A stretch of 62,836 nt of DNA, the filler included, from Choristocarpus tenellus KU-1152 (taxonomy: Eukaryota; Protista; Phaeophyceae): the NCBI GenBank assembly GCA_964200185.2. It is 12 parts of 12 records of this genome, joined end to end, with 100 filler letters (N's around TTAATTAATTAA, not from the genome) between each part and the next. Parts side by side here need not be neighbours in the genome. Positions count along the whole stretch, not along the records: positions 32,173 to 40,079 come from CAXNAD020005413.1; 11 more parts are not named here. One strand, 5' to 3'. The notes beneath the pieces were generated by a model. That model did not search any database. It saw only the letters and a program-made list of their open reading frames with translations, and was not told the DNA's origin. Shown here piece by piece: positions 30,374 to 40,491 of this stretch. Position 1 is the first letter of the stretch. Every line of letters begins with the position of its first letter. The translations under genes and the position numbers were made by a program.

Positions 30374-32267
30374 CTAGTGTATCGTATCACCAACACAACA
30401 TGGATGGTGTCAGACCAAAACACAAAAATGGATGTGTGTTCATTGAGAAAGGGTGCATGCCACACAGAAACGATTGTGATACCAATACTTCAGAAAACAT
30501 AATAGTACTAATCTTATGTATTACAACATACAATTCACCTTATTGGTGACAATATTTCTTTCCAAATCTGAAATAGTTGTGCTCCCATTCCCCTCGCTGA
30601 ATCTCTTTTGGTTATTATTGTGAAAGCAAGGTGAGGCTTCTAAAATGACTCAAGCGATAGATTTTGCAGCAGCTGAGTACCGTTTTATTCATTAGCCGAT
30701 CTTTTCCTGACACGTGAGACCCAAAAAAATTTCCCTCTGCGCCTGTGTAAGTAAGTATATTCAGTTCAACACCAATAGCAATAATACAACTGTGGTGGAA
30801 TATACAAGCTAGACAAAATTTGGCCAATTAAAAACAAGAAGAATTTCGAATCACTGCCAGGTGTCGTAATTCAACTTGTGCCTCTAAACCCACTTGTTAT
30901 TTATTTTATGTTATTTATTTCGGCAACAGTTTCAACCATCAAACGCCTGGTACACCCATCTCTTATCAATCTTGGCAGTGTGAGAAACAAAAAAATATTG
31001 ACAATACAAGGTGAAACGGAAATTCGACAAATTTATATCGCGGAATTCGCCAATAAAAATATTTAAAATATTGGGGACTCTTTTGCGTGAAAGAAGGTAA
31101 TGTAAGAGACCGTCGACTGAGAGAAGCAAATGCAATCAAATCGGTCCCATAGAACGGTTCAAGACCGGTCACCGGCTCTACAGTGATGTGTTCTCAACAT
31201 CGTATGGAACGGCTCTACAGGGAGATGAGTTTTGCAAATAGGGACAAGGTAACTCGGGTCCAACTGGCGACAGATAACGTTGAAAATGTGTCAACGGGTT
31301 GGACAGTTTGCAGTTTGGGTTGGACAGTTTGCATAGAACAGCAACACTTGTTTGTTGCTGAGGGTGAACCTCCCCGGTGGATCAGCTCACTCATCTTGTT
31401 CCTTCTTTCCACTCTACCAAGTACACGAAATCAATAGTACCAAGTACGGCGTAAAGCCTGGCACACACAAATCATGGATACGACAGTTTCTTTTGCAGAC
31501 AAAGCAGCAATCAAAATAACGCAATTCATCCAAGTGGGGGTACACACAGCCCATCCAACTTGAGATATCAACGATTTAGGTGCTGAACACCAAGGAGACT
31601 GGAAGTAGGGTTAAGGAGACACATCACATGCATCATATACATTATATATACCGTAACACACACATGCAGCATATGAGGGCTCATCAACTCAAGTAGTATA
31701 GACTGGACCATCCAATGAGACCATCAAATCTTCGTGCATGATCAAAAATCATCAAAGCACACAAATGCTGGCGAGCAAAACAATCGTGAAACAAGAAAGA
31801 GCACTCAAACTGAAAATCGATTGCTCCAAACAAGGACCAACTGCATCAAGAGCTCACAGAAACCTCTCCCAAGAAGTCGATGGTATCACTGTACCATTGA
31901 AAAAATATACGGTGTGGGGGTGCTTCCTGGAAATAAAAAAGTATCATACCTGCAAATATAAAAATTCTCCAGGAGTCAGAGGTCTACTTTTCTTCTGTCT
32001 CCAACTCTACCCCCCCCCCCCACACACACAAAACAAAAAGCTAAAAGACCCCTATAAACATACAAGTATGAANNNNNNNNNNNNNNNNNNNNNNNNNNNN
32101 NNNNNNNNNNNNNNNNTTAATTAATTAANNNNNNNNNNNNNNNNNNNNNNNNNNNNNNNNNNNNNNNNNNNNTTTCCTAGTTTTGGTCCAAATGGACACC
32201 TTGGTGTAGACCACCCCCGCCCCCCCAGATATTTTGAGTCCTTAACAGCACATATATATCTGAACAG

Positions 32268-35200
32268 AGTATGCTTAGCATTACACTATCCCGAGGCCTC
32301 AGGTGTACTTGATCCAGACTACCCTGCTTTCTGTCAAGGTCCTTCTACTGCTGTGACTGCAGTGCACTTTTACCATGGAGGACAACTGCCAAACCGCTAT
32401 GAAAACCGCCTCTTTGCTGCTGACTTTGTCAAGGTACTATTTCAGCTTACCTGACCAAACCAGTACTAGGGCGGTTCCTAAAATTAAGAATAGGGCAAAG
32501 GTACTTCTTGCGTGTCTCATTTAAATGCTGAAGATGTACACCTTTAAAAGCAAAAGATTCGGTATCGCAGTTTTGCTTAAGGGTATGGTTAGATGTGGAT
32601 TTTGAAGAGTTCAGCACAGAGACGAGTCCTAGTTACATTGTCGTAAAGTCTTGACATTGTCATTGTCATGTTGGAACTGCTTCCAGAAAAAAAATCGTGA
32701 GTTCGATTTTTGGTTAGCTAAGCTTGTTCACCATCTGCTCCATTCTATAACTTTGTATATGAGGAAAGTCAATTCTGCTGCACAGATCATATTTTTCCGG
32801 GGCGATCCTGTAGTATTTATAGCAATATCACAACACACTACTACTGCAAAAAAAACACTGGTGAGTCATCCATTAAGAGACCAACTTGCATCAACTCCAG
32901 AGTAGTACATTATGTTGCAGTGCTTCACCCTGAACATTGTAGTCAATTTATGTTGCCTAGTAGGGAATAGCAAAAAATTGAGCCTTGCCTTATGAAACTG
33001 GCCCAAAATATGTCAATGGGACCGAGGACTCTCTTCTGGTTCATAACATGCATCTTACACATCACATCTTCCTCTCAATGGTTCTCTGTGACAGAGCTGT
33101 GTGTTTTATTTTAATGGTGACCCAACCAGTGGTGAGGTGGACTTCAGTCAGGCCCATGTATTGTTTGAAGGACGTTCTGTGGTCGACTTTGCCGAAGATC
33201 CGCACACTGGTAATTGAGAAAATAACACCTGTGATCAGGGTCTTGACTGTCAAAGAGTTTTGTCCATGTTTCCCCTATGGTTGAGGATCTTGATTGCCAA
33301 GTAGATCTCGATGACAAGAAGTGTGTCCTATGTACATTGTTGATGTGTCAATTTGTTGCCTCTTGTGTGCAATTTGCTCTATCTCCAGAAGGGGTATTGT
33401 GTATAGAGCTGGGTACTCCAAACTAAATTACATTTGAACACATGGTTGTGGAAAAGAAGAGCGAAAACCCGACACATTATCCCCTGTCCTAGCTGAAACT
33501 GCATGGATCACTACAATGACTTATTCTTGTCACATCTTAGCACCCTAAATATCTGATATGCCATTCACCACAACACTATGTTCATGTTATGGAGAGGTAT
33601 TCGCCTTTCATCGCCCCCTATTGATACAAAGGTGTCCTCTACGGTGTTGATGCAAAGTACCACATTCTTCTGAGGATTGGAGCTGAAGTGGATCCTAATG
33701 AAGTGCCTTATGAAGGTGATGATGACAAAGATACACCCACCCCAGCACCTTATCAAGACTATTCAACCCCAGGACCATATACTACCCCTGTAGGAGGCAT
33801 ATTGTCCTCTCCTCCTACTTTGAAGTGGGAGGTAGATGCAGTCAGTGGCATATCTGAGGGGCTTTTGGTGTTCGGTCCAATTGTTGTGAACAATTTCTGG
33901 GGGAAGACTGTCACCAGAGGCTACAATAATCAGGTCAGCTGCCATGTAACCCCTTTGTGTGTACTGAACCAAGTCATGTCCACCTGCTGATGTTGAACTC
34001 ATGAACAAACCTCCGATCCATTATCTGTACTGTCCTCACTCCCTTCTGCAATTCCATTAAATGCCCAATCCACCTAGGTCGCACTCTTGAGATGTTAATG
34101 AGTGGAATACATCAGTTGTGAAGAGCATGATATATCGAAACCTCTCTCTCTCTTAGGTCATCTCATGTCGTACTTCCAAACCCCCCTGTACCTACTTGCC
34201 TTCAGCAGTTGTCGGAAGTCTGATTAGATTCTGGTTCACTCCTCACGTGCACTTGCACTGATCTCCAAGTTTGCAGTACATAAAAGAAAACCCTTTGTTA
34301 TTCATCTATTCCACCAGATACCAGGACCAACTATTCACATGGAGGCCTGCAAGACATACCACCTTAGGGTCATCAACGACCTCAGCTATCCCAATCCTTC
34401 AGGCAGGCACAACTCCATGACACGGCCCAACACAACAAATCTTCATACACATGGTCTGCATATATCTGGAGAGCCTCCAAGCGATGATGTACTCTTCACA
34501 GCAATCGAACCAGGAGAAGAGCACACATGTGAGACTTTTCAGCTGCCATAGCTTGGAAAGTTGGGCAGAGGAGATCTTGCTACGGTTTAGGGAGTGATGT
34601 GTAGCGTTTTCTGGTTGGGTTGCCTTGAATCTGAAGGATGGAATGTTATTCAGAGAGTAGCCAAAGCGAAAACACAACATAAACAAACAAAAACCTAACA
34701 CTGTACTTCATACTCTCTTGTGAACCTCATACTGCACAAAACACTCTACATGCACTAGGTTGGATTGTGTTGAATGTGATCATTTGTATATCATTAGTCT
34801 TCCCCTACCTAGGTGATCCTTAGCATTAGTGATGTGCAATTAGGTCGATCCCAGTCAGCCAGCCAGCAGCTCTCCCACCCTACACGACTGTTTGCAATGG
34901 TCTTTGTCCTATTGACCTGGTTGAGAGCGTACAGACATGTACACAGTGCCATGTGACCACTCTGGCGGCACTTTCTGGTACCATCCACATCACCATTCGT
35001 CCACCACCCTTCAGCTGGGTGGGGGTGCCATGGGAGCTCTGGTGATTGAAGACCGTAAGGAAGTTCACCGTGTGCCGCAACAGATATTTGATATGCCAGA
35101 TACTGTCATTGTCATTCAGGTGAGAGAGAACTGGCTGTTCATTTGCCTCTGCTAGTGTTATTCTAGTAATGGACAGGTATGTTATATTGACAACTCTTTC

Positions 35201-38200
35201 ATGTCTACATTGACCTCTTCTGACCGCATAGAGCATGTGCTCTGAAATATTGTGATAGATAGATAGTGTTGAAGTAATATATACAATTATTTCCTATATT
35301 TTATAGAAGCGGTATGGTGCTAGCATCATGGTAATAACCCTAACCCTAATGACTACAAGAATATAATCCCAGAATTGCAAGAAATACATCAAAAGAGGGT
35401 ATGGCTATTGCTGATGTAATGGCAGTGTGAGTACCATTGTGTAATGCTTTATCAAGTATTCAGAACAGAACAAGTGCAATTCGCTTGATAAGAAGAACAA
35501 TGTAGGCTACACAATAAACCAGATTTTTTGAAGACATAATTCGCCCATGTTACCCTATCCTGTCACACAGCGCCCCAATTTCTCTCTGCTCCTGGGTGCG
35601 TTTTTTTTTGTACACACACCTGCAGGAGATGGACATTGACAGCACCAAACAAGCAAAAATAGCCAGTGGTGACCAGCTCTGGTCAACCACTGCCACCACC
35701 AGTCACTACCTCATCAATGGCGAGGTCAGGCCCACTCTAGTACTAGAGGTAGGCAAGTGGGCGCGCTGGCGGCTGGCCTTTTCTGGTCACAAACACAACC
35801 ATGCCCTTAGCCTTGTGCCACGTACAATTGACTGTGAGTTGAATGTCCTAGCTATGGATGGTGTATATCTGGAGAAGGTCCCACGTCCCGTCACAGAGCT
35901 GTTTTTTACACCAGCGTCAAGGTGGGTAAGAACCTACTGCCCAATTTCTGAAGTTACCGTTGTGGGCATGGAATATAGCGTAATACTCCAGCACATGATA
36001 ATGTCATCCTTTGGTACATATGCAAATGGTGGAGTTCATTATGCTTGATCTTCTGCGGCTTTGACTCTCTTTCATAACGTATTGTTTGTGCCTCAAGTGT
36101 AAAAGCAACCACCTGTATCCTGGAAGCAGTTGATGTATGTTGTACTGGAGAAATATGGCAGGAGGTCAATGTGATATACATTATTTTCTTCAAAAGAGTG
36201 CAACCTTGTAGATACCTGAACTTTCCAGTCTCACTCCAATAACACTGCTGGACTTGACTTCACATGACCTACGTCAAGAAAATTTGGGACCAATCTCAGC
36301 ACATCTATACTCATGAGGGATCTTGCAATTAATACCTATCCATTCTGATTGTATCCCCTATCAACCTCTTCCCTCAGAGTTGATGTGGCAATCCGCTGTC
36401 TTGGCCGAGGCAGCAAGCTTCTCGCTGTTCAGTCAGCAAACGATCCTGGGGATTTTCTAGAAGTTGCTAATATTGAGGTGCAGTCACCAACTTCTGCAGG
36501 AGAACCAGCTGATCCTGACTTGGAAGATTGGGTACCTTGCAGGTGCACTGCAAGAATCAAGTGTTAGGCATTCACTTCTGAACGCTGGAACAATAACATA
36601 TATATAAGCCTAATCCCAACCTGCACAACAACACTCAAAAGTAAGCGCAAGTGTGAAGCAGTACCTGCTGATATGCTTGCAACTTGAAAATGCTAAATAG
36701 GTTCTTACGCATGCTTCATTTGTTTCAATCAATAGGCCGTATTATCTGGAGGACCTCACGGGCTCAAACATCTCCACCGCTGCAGTCCAGTCTTTGGTGG
36801 TAAGCATGTACCTTTTTACTTCGCATAGATTTACAGAATATTCAGAGCTCACTAAGAACCCAGCGCTTGACCTTTCTGCTTCAAAAAGAGGACTTAGTCA
36901 CCCAGTGTGTTAGAATCCAATCCTCTAAGTGATGTATCCTTAGGGAGAAATGAAAATGTGATCATGGCAGGGGAAGAATTATTGTAACAATTTGTTAGAG
37001 ATTTTGCATGACCCGAGACAAGGGTTAGGGACTTTGGCGCAACTTTTGGCAGTAGGTCACACTGGGTAGGGAATCATTTCTCGTGTTCTTGTGCTGCATT
37101 ACCCCTCAGTGGATGCAACAATGACACCCTGTCACAAAGACTACATCTCAGTATTGTGTCGGATATTTCTGATTGTGCTAAACTTGACCAAAGTTGTCGA
37201 TACCTTCTATCGTTTGTCTTGCCCTCATTACAGGTCCGTGAAACTATTGGGGGAAAACCGTTTACAGGCCCTGATGACTTCTTGATGAGCATTCCCTTGG
37301 GAGAGGTTCAAGAATGGAATCTCATTGGTTCAGCATCACACCCATTCCACATCCACATTAACCACATGCAGTTAGTTGATGTTGGGGGGCCTGACCTCGT
37401 GCCTGGATGGTACAGGAAAGGCGACTGGGTGGACACAGTTTCGAGTGAGTCAGACTGGAAGTATGGATGAAAAATAATCTTAGGACCTCTTGTTGAGACT
37501 GTTAATTTTGACCGGTAAGGTGATCAATATCGTTGCACTATTGCTTCAACCGTTCCTATAGGTAGCAGTTGAGGCTCTTGTTGTAACAGCACTAACCTCA
37601 CCTTCCTCTGTGCGCCATAAATATACTGCCCTCAGCTGATCTGGCAGTGGTGCGATATAATCCTGTGCGCTTTGTGGGACATGTGGTCATGCACTGCCAC
37701 ATTTCTGAACACTCTGACCAAGGTGTGATGGCCGTGGCTAACATCTTTGGGGACAGTGATATGTCTAGCAATGACCCCACTGCACTTGAACCAGGGACAT
37801 GCGGGTGAGGAAGGGTTAGCGCCAAGTTTGGGACAACAATGCGTTCTCTCATTTCTACAGTGATGCTTCTGTAAAAATATTGTCTATCAAAGAGCGCAGG
37901 GGTCATGTTTCTTTCCACCAATTTACGTAGGTTTACTTGATAAAAACGTTCTCTTCACAGAGCTAGACAAGGCGGCCTTGCACCTTTAGGTGTGAGTTGT
38001 TCTCATCCCATCTCACATATCATCATTTCTGAACTTAAAGTAGTTTAATTCAATTTACTTGACATATCTACTATTTCTGACTACCCTTGTTTCAGGACCA
38101 AAAGCCTTCCAGGATTTGGGTACAATCGGGATGATGAGGTCCTTGAACCGGGGCCTTCCCTGTCACCCTTCCCTCCAGAGGCACCAAATGATACCCCAGG

Positions 38201-38483
38201 TCCAATTGTCCCTGTCATTGACAACAGCAACGCCAGCATAGAGTCTCAAGAATACAAGAGTAGTGAATGGTTCAGTGCTGCAGCCATAGGGGGAGGGGCA
38301 GGTTTACTTTTGGTGGGTATCGGAGGAGTGGTGTACAGTTTACGACGAAGGAGGAGAATATCTGCTGCTGAAACAACCCAAGTAAATTCCCCAATTTCCA
38401 CAAGTGACTCCTTGAAGGGAACAGAGGTTGAAACTAACATGGGTATTGGGTCATCGTATAAACTTAGACCCATGGTCTGCTGA
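32268..38483 (+). CDS. Fusion protein: glucose/sorbosone-dehydrogenase-like beta-propeller + multicopper oxidase + C-terminal TM helix (exons 32268 or 32303-32433, 33095-33209, 33632-33933, 34318-34528, 34935-35119, 35626-35921, 36378-36542, 36736-36799, 37234-37444, 37636-37804, 38096-38483; 5' end off-contig)
   Basis: Propeller blades: STAVTAVHFYHGGQLPNRYENRLFAADF and VVDFAEDPHTGVLYGVD. MCO motifs: YNNQIPGPT, NLHTHGLH, GTFWYHPHHH, HPFHIHINH, HCHISEHSDQGVM. TM AAAIGGGAGLLLVGIGGVVYSL followed by RRRRR. All ten introns are GT-AG and phase-compatible. Confidence 0.88.
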
Positions 38484-39872
38484 CTGCAATGTTTATTCTC
38501 CTTTGACAGTCAGTTACGTTTTATGTTTTCGCTGACGTGAGTAGAGGATAAAGCGGATACTTTCGCAAGTATTGTTACCTTTGTGATGGTGATATCAATT
38601 GCTTTGGTGCTTGGCACCACAAGGTTTTGATAGGGTGGGGGAATAAGGAAGGGCTGGATGATTGTGGCAGAATATTAACGTACTTCTGGTGTGAAAGTAT
38701 GACTTGAGAAATTGTTTACTGTACTGTACTTGGTATTGTTGATTTATACTCACGAGTACAAGGTAGTACTCGTGTGCGCACTTGACTCAAATTGTCTCCT
38801 TGTTTCCTGTACCTGAATTGTGATATATTGAATATTTAGTGAACTATGCTATGAAGAGACTTTGTGCACTTATTATCATTCAACATTTTGGAGATGTTGA
38901 CACAGGTGAGAAAGAAGTACGTACTTCCTATTACCAAGAAACAGAAAAAAGACGATGCCCTTAGACCAGCCCCTTTCATGGCCAAGGTGCCGTATCTGCT
39001 TCCTACTGAACTGTAGGTTGTGGTAGCTCGAGAATGGCCATAGTCATTTAGTGAATAGGGATTGTTTGTCCAGTACCAGATAGTAGTAGTATATGATGCC
39101 ACAGAATGTATTATTGACTTGTACAATGACACGAAAGGACCTCTTTATTGTACCATATCATCTTGAAGATTCCGAGATGTAAGTGGTTTGATAGGCGACT
39201 TAGTCCTAACTTCTGACCCAGTCCATAGTGAGAGTGTGCCGCTTTACCTGTATTATGGTACAAGCACAAAAAAACTATGAAATCAAACCTTTCTCCTTTT
39301 CCACAAAATAAATGTATTTTGAAATTCGTCATGAGGCACTTGTGGTAGTGCTACTATCATATTCTACACAAGAAGTGTGCAACAGACAATAATAGCACAG
39401 AATTTAGTTAGGGAGGATATCATCATTTTTGTTACAGTCGTTTTCCTCTATGAAGGTATGGCTTTAGTCAATCGGAATTGTATCCCCCCTTGCCACAAGT
39501 GTGTAAGTAGCAGTTGCGTTATTGATCGTTCTTTTATTAAAGTCAAATACCAATATTTTTTTGAGGCATAAGCTCAAATAGTACCATTAGACTGGTGCTG
39601 CTGAAAGTCAAATCATTCCAAAAATGCATCAGAGTAGATACATGTGAAATTATCAGACTGTGCTCGAATGACAACCCCTCAGACCAAAGGAATCAGTAGT
39701 GACCATAGGTGGAAGAAGCAAGAGACAGGCACCAGTGGGACCACACGAACCCGACCAACTAATCTTACAGGATGCCTATATTCTTATTTGTACTTCCTAC
39801 ATTCGGAATTAAATGTAACATGACTTTCGCAAGCCCCAATGAAGAAGCAAGGTTTTTTTCACATGTTAAAAT

Positions 39873-40045
39873 GACTCAAAGTATCTAGGAGGGGTGGCGG
39901 CTGTCTGTTTGGGGTCAATTTTTTCATGTCGCGATTTTTGAGTGATTTGGTTGCATAAGTCGGACGGATAATGTAAGTGCACTTTTCCTGATTTTGTCCT
40001 CAAATGGATACACTGGTTTAGCCCCCACCCCCCACCCCCCCCCCC
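39873..40045. mobile_element. ~170-bp MITE-like element of the TCAAAGTATCT(G)n family
   Basis: Reverse-complement match to 56958-57121 and 61585-61713; shared terminus gactcaaagtatct. Confidence 0.7.
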
Positions 40046-40491
40046 ACATGTCTGATATTTGTGATGGTTGGGATTGTGGNNNNNNNNNNNNNNNNNNNNN
40101 NNNNNNNNNNNNNNNNNNNNNNNTTAATTAATTAANNNNNNNNNNNNNNNNNNNNNNNNNNNNNNNNNNNNNNNNNNNNATAACAGGGAAACCCAAAGAG
40201 GGGGAAAAAGTGGGGTGTCTTTTTTTTGGTGGGGGGGGGGGGGGTTACTACAAAAAAAGCTCCAAGTGATTGCAACAACAAATCCCATCTGCCTTGTGAA
40301 AAATCGTGATAAAATCGTGACAAAAACGCCTTCCAACTGCACCAACATCATACCGTGGGTATGATCTCTCACCCCCAAAACGCTGTTGCCCTTATGGCCA
40401 GATTCTCCTGTGCGCCCTTGACCTTTTCAGACAGTGACGTGAACAGTCCCCGCACCAATGCACTCTGGTCATAGTGATACACACATGGGGG

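What the first reader, a model, noticed from the sequence alone, without database searches (positions are those of the whole stretch)
32268..38483. Membrane-anchored PQQ-dehydrogenase-like propeller fused to a complete multicopper oxidase
Seen: one spliced frame of 11 phase-compatible exons. It starts with the last blades of a glucose/sorbosone dehydrogenase-type six-bladed propeller (STAVTAVHFYHGGQLPNRYENRLFAADF; VVDFAEDPHTGVLYGVD..ILLRI). Within a single exon (33632-33933) it passes through an acidic Pro/Thr linker into a multicopper oxidase, so the linker-oxidase join does not depend on a splice choice. All four Cu-binding motifs are intact (HTHG, WYHPH, HPFHIH, HCHxxxHxxxxM with axial Met). 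A Pro-rich stalk, TM helix and cytosolic tail follow. Known: GSDH/AA12-type propellers oxidise sugars using PQQ; fungal AA12 enzymes are fused to an electron-acceptor cytochrome; MCOs reduce O2 to water. Inference: this could be a one-polypeptide cell-surface electron chain (sugar -> PQQ -> Cu -> O2) or a quinone/phenolic/metal redox-cycling enzyme at the algal wall. I do not recognise this architecture as a characterised family. Caveat: some eukaryotic GSDH-like domains (HHIP, HIPL1) are non-catalytic, and the N-terminal part is off-contig.
Basis: partly seen in the sequence, partly recalled or inferred. Interest (0 to 1): 0.88.

Follow-up and report, generated by a model that had tools for sequence, protein, structure and literature searches.

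The report
Algal sugar-dehydrogenase–multicopper-oxidase fusion protein
Brown algae and their yellow-green relatives carry a secreted or membrane-anchored protein that joins a bacterial-type sugar-dehydrogenase propeller to a copper oxidase, a pairing I found described nowhere and that may pass electrons from sugars to oxygen at the cell wall.

Summary
The fusion is real. The piece holds the last 11 exons of an intron-rich gene: end of a GSDH-type six-bladed propeller, an acidic Pro/Thr linker, a three-domain multicopper oxidase (MCO), stalk, TM helix and tail. About 400 N-terminal residues are off-piece. Full-length orthologues (signal peptide-GSDH-PKD-MCO-TM) exist in Undaria, Cladosiphon and Ectocarpus. 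Tribonema has the fusion without PKD or TM. This gene also lacks PKD. Brown-algal loci share its intron positions. The Ectocarpus orthologue (CBJ26284.1) is annotated only as an iron-transport MCO; no paper searched describes the fusion. Corrections: the T1 axial residue is Val, not Met; exon 1 most likely starts at 32303. The usual proton-donor Glu of the O2 site is Ser/Ala in every fusion. Orthologue propellers keep the catalytic His and the Arg-Asn PQQ motif that human HHIP has lost, but not the three basic PQQ-carboxylate clamps of bacterial sGDH. Best reading: a cell-surface dehydrogenase-oxidase couple (0.45). No activity, transcript or domain docking was shown.

The parts
32173..32241 (.). 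Copy of a dispersed repeat inside the upstream intron; the piece breaks here, so the 5' part of the gene (about 400 codons) is missing
   Evidence: many contigs of both runs match only 32202-32241; similar to 39984-40064
32303..32433 (+). Exon 1 (first exon in the piece, phase-1 acceptor): late blade of GSDH propeller, Undaria residues about 400-442.
33095..33209 (+). Exon 2: propeller, includes the R-x-x-V-D strand matching sGDH R406/R408 region
33632..33933 (+). Exon 3: last propeller strands (to about 33681), acidic Pro/Thr linker (about 33682-33801), start of MCO domain 1. In brown-algal loci this is two exons with a PKD exon between them
34318..34528 (+). Exon 4: MCO domain 1; Cu motif I HTHG at 34444-34455
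34935..35119 (+). Exon 5: MCO domain 1; Cu motif II WYHPH at 34976-34990
35626..35921 (+). Exon 6: MCO domain 2 (split by one more intron in brown-algal loci)
36378..36542 (+). Exon 7: MCO domain 2 end and linker
36736..36799 (+). Exon 8: start of MCO domain 3
37234..37444 (+). Exon 9: MCO domain 3; Cu motif III HPFHIH at 37339-37356
37636..37804 (+). Exon 10: MCO domain 3; Cu motif IV at 37692-37730, with Ser at the E506/E498 position (37713-37715) and Val at the T1 axial position (37725-37727)
38096..38483 (+). Exon 11: Pro/acidic stalk, TM helix (about 38277-38342), five-Arg stop-transfer, cytosolic tail, stop codon 38481-38483
   Evidence: TM conserved in L003 and L004

Best explanation
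A type I membrane protein whose outside part couples two redox enzymes. The propeller binds PQQ and Ca (PQQ taken from associated bacteria or seawater) and oxidises a sugar or uronic acid from the wall or exudate. The MCO, with a three-coordinate T1 copper (Val/Ile/Leu axial), re-oxidises the reduced PQQ and passes the electrons to O2. The hand-over is either by transient docking across the flexible linker or, more likely given the variable spacer, through a small mediator such as a phenolic quinone or a metal ion. Shown: the gene, its domain order, its conservation across brown and yellow-green algae, intact Cu ligands, GSDH fold in an orthologue. Inferred: splicing, secretion, PQQ binding, both activities, substrate, coupling.
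For: Same domain order in Undaria, Cladosiphon and three Ectocarpus proteins, in four more genomic loci and in Tribonema. The fused MCOs form one group (SH-aLRT 88, quick tree) and so do the fused propellers (96), which fits one old fusion kept since the brown/yellow-green split. The Undaria propeller model (pLDDT 84) is closest to PQQ sugar dehydrogenases: 3a9g Z 39.2, 2g8s 36.3, against HHIP 29.0 or less. His144 and R228-N229 equivalents are kept in all orthologues, Tribonema included, while human HHIP reads LHDP at the RNP motif. Fungal CcPDH binds PQQ without K377 and passes electrons to a fused acceptor domain (PMC6881789, PMC4133262), a precedent for both points.
Against: sGDH K377, R406 and R408 are not conserved in register in this gene or its orthologues. 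The His is also kept in HHIP (PMC4133262), so it is not diagnostic. I found no characterised member of this GSDH-PKD subtype. The proton-donor Glu (CotA E498, CueO E506; PMC2944330) is Ser or Ala in all fusions but Glu in 124 of 133 fetched MCOs, and the Fet3p E487 position is Ser/Asn/Ala, so O2 reduction may be slow or altered. The spacer differs between lineages, and the ectodomain model failed (pLDDT 31), so no interface is shown. The His and RNP exons of this very gene lie off the piece. A source of PQQ is unknown.
Confidence: 0.45

Rival explanations
1. The propeller is a non-catalytic binding module (as in HHIP) that holds the protein on wall polysaccharide or a partner protein; only the MCO is an enzyme, a laccase-like oxidase of wall phenolics.
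For: Three basic PQQ clamps of sGDH missing. The Phaeoexplorer preprint leaves a signalling role open for brown-algal PQQ-dependent sugar dehydrogenase homologues (10.1101/2024.02.19.579948). Non-coordinating axial residue as in fungal laccases (laccase link from own knowledge). PQQ synthesis is reported for prokaryotes only (PMC4133262).
Against: His and RNP are kept between Tribonema and kelp although the rest of the propeller is about 28% identical; HHIP has lost RNP; the fold is closer to the enzymes than to HHIP.
Confidence: 0.28
2. A Fet3-like ferroxidase for iron uptake, as the Ectocarpus annotation says; the propeller is either incidental or supplies electrons to reduce wall-bound Fe(III).
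For: CBJ26284.1 is annotated as an iron-transport MCO. Miller et al. propose reductase, then MCO, then permease for Ectocarpus (PMC3904714). Type I membrane topology like Fet3p.
Against: The Fet3p D409 position (four before the first His of motif III, by the numbering in PMC4460010) is Gly in the window, Undaria, Cladosiphon, Ectocarpus and Tribonema. The MCO belongs to a bacterial-like subfamily whose best solved relative is Thermus laccase. Tribonema's copy has no TM helix. The annotation is by similarity as far as I could see.
Confidence: 0.14
3. The propeller is the enzyme, and the MCO has become a slow or partial electron sink or relay (a built-in acceptor, like the cytochrome of AA12/CDH) that does not turn O2 to water efficiently, or releases peroxide.
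For: Loss of the proton-donor acid at both known positions in every fusion and in almost no unfused relative (PMC2944330).
Against: All T2/T3 His and the Asp after motif I are kept. The loss is probably one inherited event, not many. Another proton route may exist.
Confidence: 0.11
4. Two neighbouring genes, or an assembly or gene-model artefact.
For: No RNA evidence for this organism.
Against: Propeller end and MCO start lie in one exon; one contig spans the join and a second sample agrees; independent annotations of several genomes give one protein.
Confidence: 0.02

Closest known systems
Ectocarpus siliculosus CBJ26284.1 (UniProt D7FVB2) and its orthologues in Undaria, Cladosiphon, Laminaria and Tribonema (KAG5181816.1)
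   Same: Same protein family and domain order; 55-57% identity over eight exons to the brown algae, 40% to Tribonema; intron positions shared with brown-algal loci
   Different: These are database entries annotated as MCO or unnamed; no paper in the searched library cites the accessions. The window gene lacks the PKD domain of the brown-algal proteins; Tribonema lacks PKD and TM.
Soluble PQQ glucose/aldose dehydrogenases (A. calcoaceticus sGDH 1c9u; Asd 2g8s, 3a9g; Pfam GSDH PF07995)
   Same: Six-bladed propeller, His144, R228-N229, Ca-loop Gly
   Different: K377/R406/R408 not in register; eukaryotic; fused to an MCO and a TM anchor
Bacterial GSDH-PKD proteins (mostly Actinomycetota)
   Same: Nearest propeller subtype by sequence, tree and shape (TM 0.79-0.80), and the algal PKD best matches the PKD that follows GSDH in them
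   Different: None carried a Cu-oxidase domain in the hits seen; their own function is not established in anything I read
Fungal AA12 pyranose dehydrogenase CcPDH (AA8-AA12-CBM1) and cellobiose dehydrogenase
   Same: Secreted eukaryotic dehydrogenase fused to its own electron-acceptor domain (PMC6881789)
   Different: Acceptor is a cytochrome b, not an O2-reducing MCO; AA12 propeller is more distant (Z about 30, 11-12% identity)
Three-domain multicopper oxidases (Thermus laccase, CueO, CotA, Fet3p)
   Same: Four Cu motifs, three cupredoxin domains; Fet3p shares the single TM anchor
   Different: Axial Val instead of Met; no E506/E498 or E487 acid; no D409; N-terminal propeller
HHIP / HIPL-type propellers
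   Same: Same fold family, His kept, C-terminal Arg pair absent
   Different: HHIP has lost the RNP motif and has no MCO

Membership tests
Three-domain multicopper oxidase | T1 His/Cys/His and eight T2/T3 His in four motifs | tested here: met
   HTHG, WYHPH, HPFHIH, HCHxxxH read from exons 4, 5, 9, 10; Pfam hits
Three-domain multicopper oxidase | Three cupredoxin domains in order | tested here: met
   Cu-oxidase_3, Cu-oxidase (weak, E 0.0013), Cu-oxidase_2 in exon order
Three-domain multicopper oxidase | Proton-donor acid near the trinuclear site (CotA E498/CueO E506, or Fet3p E487); common, not strictly defining | tested here: not met
   Ser at both positions in the window; Ser/Ala and Asn/Ala in orthologues; Glu in 124 of 133 fetched MCOs (PMC2944330)
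Three-domain multicopper oxidase | Four-electron reduction of O2 to water | not testable with these tools
   needs an enzyme assay
Bacterial laccase/CueO type T1 site | Axial Met at Cys+10 | tested here: not met
   Val in window; Ile, Val, Leu in orthologues
Fet3-type ferroxidase | Fe(II)-binding acid D409 | tested here: not met
   Gly four residues before the first His of motif III (numbering from PMC4460010, assumes no gap)
Fet3-type ferroxidase | Fe(II)-binding acids E185 and D283 | not tested
   no reliable alignment to Fet3p was obtained
Fet3-type ferroxidase | Single C-terminal TM anchor | tested here: met
   absent in Tribonema
sGDH/Asd PQQ dehydrogenases (PF07995) | Six-bladed GSDH-type propeller | tested here: met
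   In the Undaria orthologue: Pfam 29.7 bits against cut-off 25, profile E 8e-43 to 1c9u, Z 39.2 to 3a9g. Window exons 1-3 match its last part
sGDH/Asd PQQ dehydrogenases (PF07995) | Catalytic His144 and PQQ-binding R228-N229 | tested here: inconclusive
   Present in all orthologues, but these exons of the window gene are off the piece
sGDH/Asd PQQ dehydrogenases (PF07995) | PQQ carboxylate clamps K377, R406, R408 | tested here: not met
   Not in register in window exons 1-2 or orthologues; a Lys and an Arg sit one residue off in most brown-algal copies
sGDH/Asd PQQ dehydrogenases (PF07995) | PQQ- and Ca-dependent sugar oxidation | not testable with these tools
   needs an enzyme assay
CAZy AA12 (CcPDH/TrAA12) | AA12-type propeller, often with AA8 cytochrome and CBM1 | tested here: not met
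   No TrAA12 Pfam hit on full-length orthologues; AA12 ranks below Asd by structure; no cytochrome domain
HHIP-like non-catalytic propellers | Loss of the Arg-Asn PQQ motif | tested here: not met
   HHIP reads LHDP; algal orthologues keep RNP

The most novel reading that the evidence does not exclude
A natural single-chain respiratory unit on the algal surface: sugar to PQQ to T1 copper to O2 by direct electron transfer inside one polypeptide, running on a cofactor supplied by bacteria, assembled from a horizontally acquired GSDH-PKD gene and an MCO before brown and yellow-green algae split.
Probability: 0.2. Interest if true: 0.9.

Novelty: new variant of a known kind. Interest (0 to 1): 0.72.

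Why it matters
It would be the first PQQ-type dehydrogenase fused to an O2-reducing copper oxidase that I could find, and a PQQ enzyme candidate in algae, where the tested eukaryotic examples I read of are fungal. It gives a concrete gene for three open points in brown-algal biology: what the predicted PQQ-dependent sugar dehydrogenase activity does, whether the MCO invoked for iron uptake in Ectocarpus is a ferroxidase at all, and whether seaweeds depend on bacteria for PQQ. Ectocarpus carries the orthologue, so these are testable. An MCO with all Cu ligands but no canonical proton-donor acid is also a natural test of MCO mechanism, and a dehydrogenase-laccase in one chain would interest bioelectrode work.

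Tried and rejected
Exons were searched one by one by reference, and natural full-length orthologues stood in for the whole protein. Window exons 1 and 2 were placed in alignment A5 only to read columns; searches and folding used A6, which holds none of them. The search of earlier findings was not open. Pfam and PDB sequence searches of exons 1-3 alone found nothing. Folding the Undaria ectodomain without an alignment failed (pLDDT 31), so no PQQ-to-T1 distance exists. No RNA run holds the gene. A bacterial GSDH-MCO fusion was looked for and not seen: 160 MCO loci from genomes and metagenomes had no GSDH motif within up to 6 kb; the top 120 MCO hits had no GSDH domain by Pfam; the non-algal long GSDH proteins had no Cu-oxidase. 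These searches were capped (8000 candidates, 80 loci), so absence is not shown. A PKD exon hidden in the window's introns was not found. A possible micro-exon at 37961-37989 was rejected: the direct exon 10-11 join gives the same five-residue spacing as the orthologues. The acceptor at 32268 was demoted in favour of 32303. Paper searches for the domain pair or the accessions found no description; Bottger et al. 2012 on Ectocarpus iron transport could not be read, so what it says of this gene is unchecked. Both trees are quick trees with long branches.

Full report
Observation. The piece 32173-40079 holds 11 GT-AG exons on the + strand that join in phase without a stop. Exon-by-exon Pfam gives Cu-oxidase_3 on exons 4-5, Cu-oxidase weakly on exon 6 and Cu-oxidase_2 on exons 9-10. 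The four copper motifs are complete. Exon 3 runs from the last propeller strands through an acidic Pro/Thr linker into the MCO. Exon 11 has a stalk, a hydrophobic helix, five Arg and a short tail. Two runs of one study hold the DNA; one 3386-base contig spans exons 1-5 without a differing letter, and pieces from the second sample agree. Neither is on record as RNA, so splicing is inferred. The piece begins in a dispersed repeat, which explains the lost 5' end.

Two corrections. The last copper motif reads HCHISEHSDQGVM. The axial position, Cys+10, is Val, and the Met aligns with the second Met of Thermus laccase. Orthologues have Ile, Val or Leu there. Four orthologous loci have a phase-1 acceptor at the position of the AG at 32301-32302, so exon 1 most likely starts at 32303.

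Relatives. A search with exon 3 found nine related exon fragments. Their loci show the same order: propeller exons, a PKD exon, linker, MCO exons and, where the contig reaches, a TM exon. A spliced eukaryotic MCO found in metagenome contigs led to a Laminaria digitata fragment and a Tribonema minus protein. Cluster look-ups then gave full-length proteins from Undaria pinnatifida (1207 aa), Cladosiphon okamuranus and several Ectocarpus, among them CBJ26284.1, annotated as an MCO in iron transport and copper resistance. Their layout is signal peptide, GSDH, PKD, Pro/Thr linker, MCO, stalk, TM, tail. The Tribonema model is cut short at the N-terminus, but its locus holds the upstream propeller exons with the His motif and a likely signal peptide; it has no PKD, and the frame ends right after the MCO, with no TM exon found. 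The window gene matches Undaria from residue about 400 on, shares the brown-algal intron positions, and joins in exon 3 two exons that flank the PKD exon elsewhere. It is 55-57% identical to crown brown algae, which are 76% identical to each other, and 40% to Tribonema. It is therefore from an early-branching brown alga or close sister, or is a divergent paralogue; I cannot tell which.

Origin. In quick trees the fused MCOs form one group (SH-aLRT 88), and the fused propellers form one group (96) beside bacterial GSDH-PKD proteins. Shape search agrees (TM 0.79-0.80 to Actinomycetota GSDH-PKD clusters), and the algal PKD best matches the PKD that follows GSDH in those proteins. The simplest history is transfer of a bacterial GSDH-PKD gene, fusion to an MCO before the brown/yellow-green split, and loss of PKD in Tribonema and in this gene. 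That is inference from unrooted quick trees with long branches. No bacterial GSDH-MCO fusion was seen in capped searches.

Is the propeller an enzyme? The Undaria domain folds with pLDDT 84 and matches PQQ sugar dehydrogenases best: 3a9g Z 39.2 (rmsd 2.1, 321 aligned), 2g8s 36.3, AA12 about 30, HHIP 29.0 or less. By profile alignment to sGDH and column reading, His144, R228-N229 and the Ca-loop Gly are kept in all orthologues. Tribonema keeps His and RNP at about 28% identity, while human HHIP keeps the His but reads LHDP. K377, R406 and R408 are not kept in register; a Lys and an Arg lie one residue away in the window gene and most brown-algal copies. Fungal CcPDH shows that PQQ can be held by other residues (PMC6881789, PMC4133262), so this weakens but does not exclude PQQ use. 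The His and RNP exons of the window gene itself are off the piece.

Is the MCO a normal oxidase? All ligands are present, and the Asp after motif I is kept. A non-coordinating axial residue usually goes with a higher T1 potential (own knowledge). The acid that delivers protons to the O2 site (CotA E498, CueO E506, or Fet3p E487; PMC2944330) is missing at both positions in every fusion, whereas 124 of 133 fetched MCOs have the Glu. This may be a single inherited change. The Fet3p D409 position is Gly (numbering from PMC4460010), which argues against the ferroxidase annotation, though E185 and D283 were not tested.

Mechanism. I favour a cell-surface dehydrogenase-oxidase couple (0.45): PQQ-dependent oxidation of a wall or exudate sugar, with the MCO returning the electrons to O2 directly or through a quinone or metal mediator. 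The variable spacer and the failed ectodomain model leave direct transfer unshown (about 0.2). Rivals are a binding propeller on a laccase-like enzyme (0.28), an iron-uptake ferroxidase as in the model of Miller et al. (PMC3904714; 0.14), an MCO reduced to an electron relay (0.11), and artefact (0.02).

Novelty. Both domains are known and the protein sits in public databases, but under MCO-only or empty names. The Phaeoexplorer preprint notes a brown-algal PQQ-dependent sugar dehydrogenase of unclear role and does not mention an MCO partner in its main text. No searched paper pairs the two domains in one protein or cites the accessions. The library misses most subscription journals, and Bottger et al. 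2012 could not be read. Verdict: a real, conserved and apparently undescribed domain fusion; new variant of known enzyme kinds; interest 0.72.

Noticed in passing
window 32173-32241 and 39984-40064: Two copies of a dispersed repeat lie at the two ends of the piece; many other contigs of both runs match the first, so the assembly breaks at this element.
   Followed up: partly
L001 and L007, 10613-20465 (ENA ERZ26962164): This orthologue looks broken: frameshift and His-to-Asp change in the motif I exon in both haplotypes, and in L001 reverse-transcriptase frames where the later MCO exons should be. Likely a pseudogene; its propeller and PKD exons still read open.
   Followed up: partly
L168 4300-6100 (Tribonema minus JAFCMP010000290.1): The annotated protein KAG5181816.1 starts mid-propeller; unannotated upstream exons supply a likely signal peptide and the His motif.
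   Followed up: yes
P0014-P0143 (MCO relatives): This MCO subfamily is patchy across foraminifera, euglenozoans, green algae, diatoms and marine bacteria, and mostly has Ala, Cys or Thr at the T1 axial position (75, 11 and 6 of 133).
   Followed up: no
L097 2695-5235 and L071 3594-5948: Bacterial MCOs fused to a C-terminal AhpC/TSA redoxin domain, another pairing of an MCO with a redox partner.
   Followed up: no
P0035, P0097, P0130: Related MCOs carrying a Hint domain (PF01079) by the precomputed Pfam column.
   Followed up: no
window 37961-37989: Short open stretch with AG and GT ends that could act as an alternative micro-exon with the acceptor at 38112; orthologue spacing does not support it.
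   Followed up: yes
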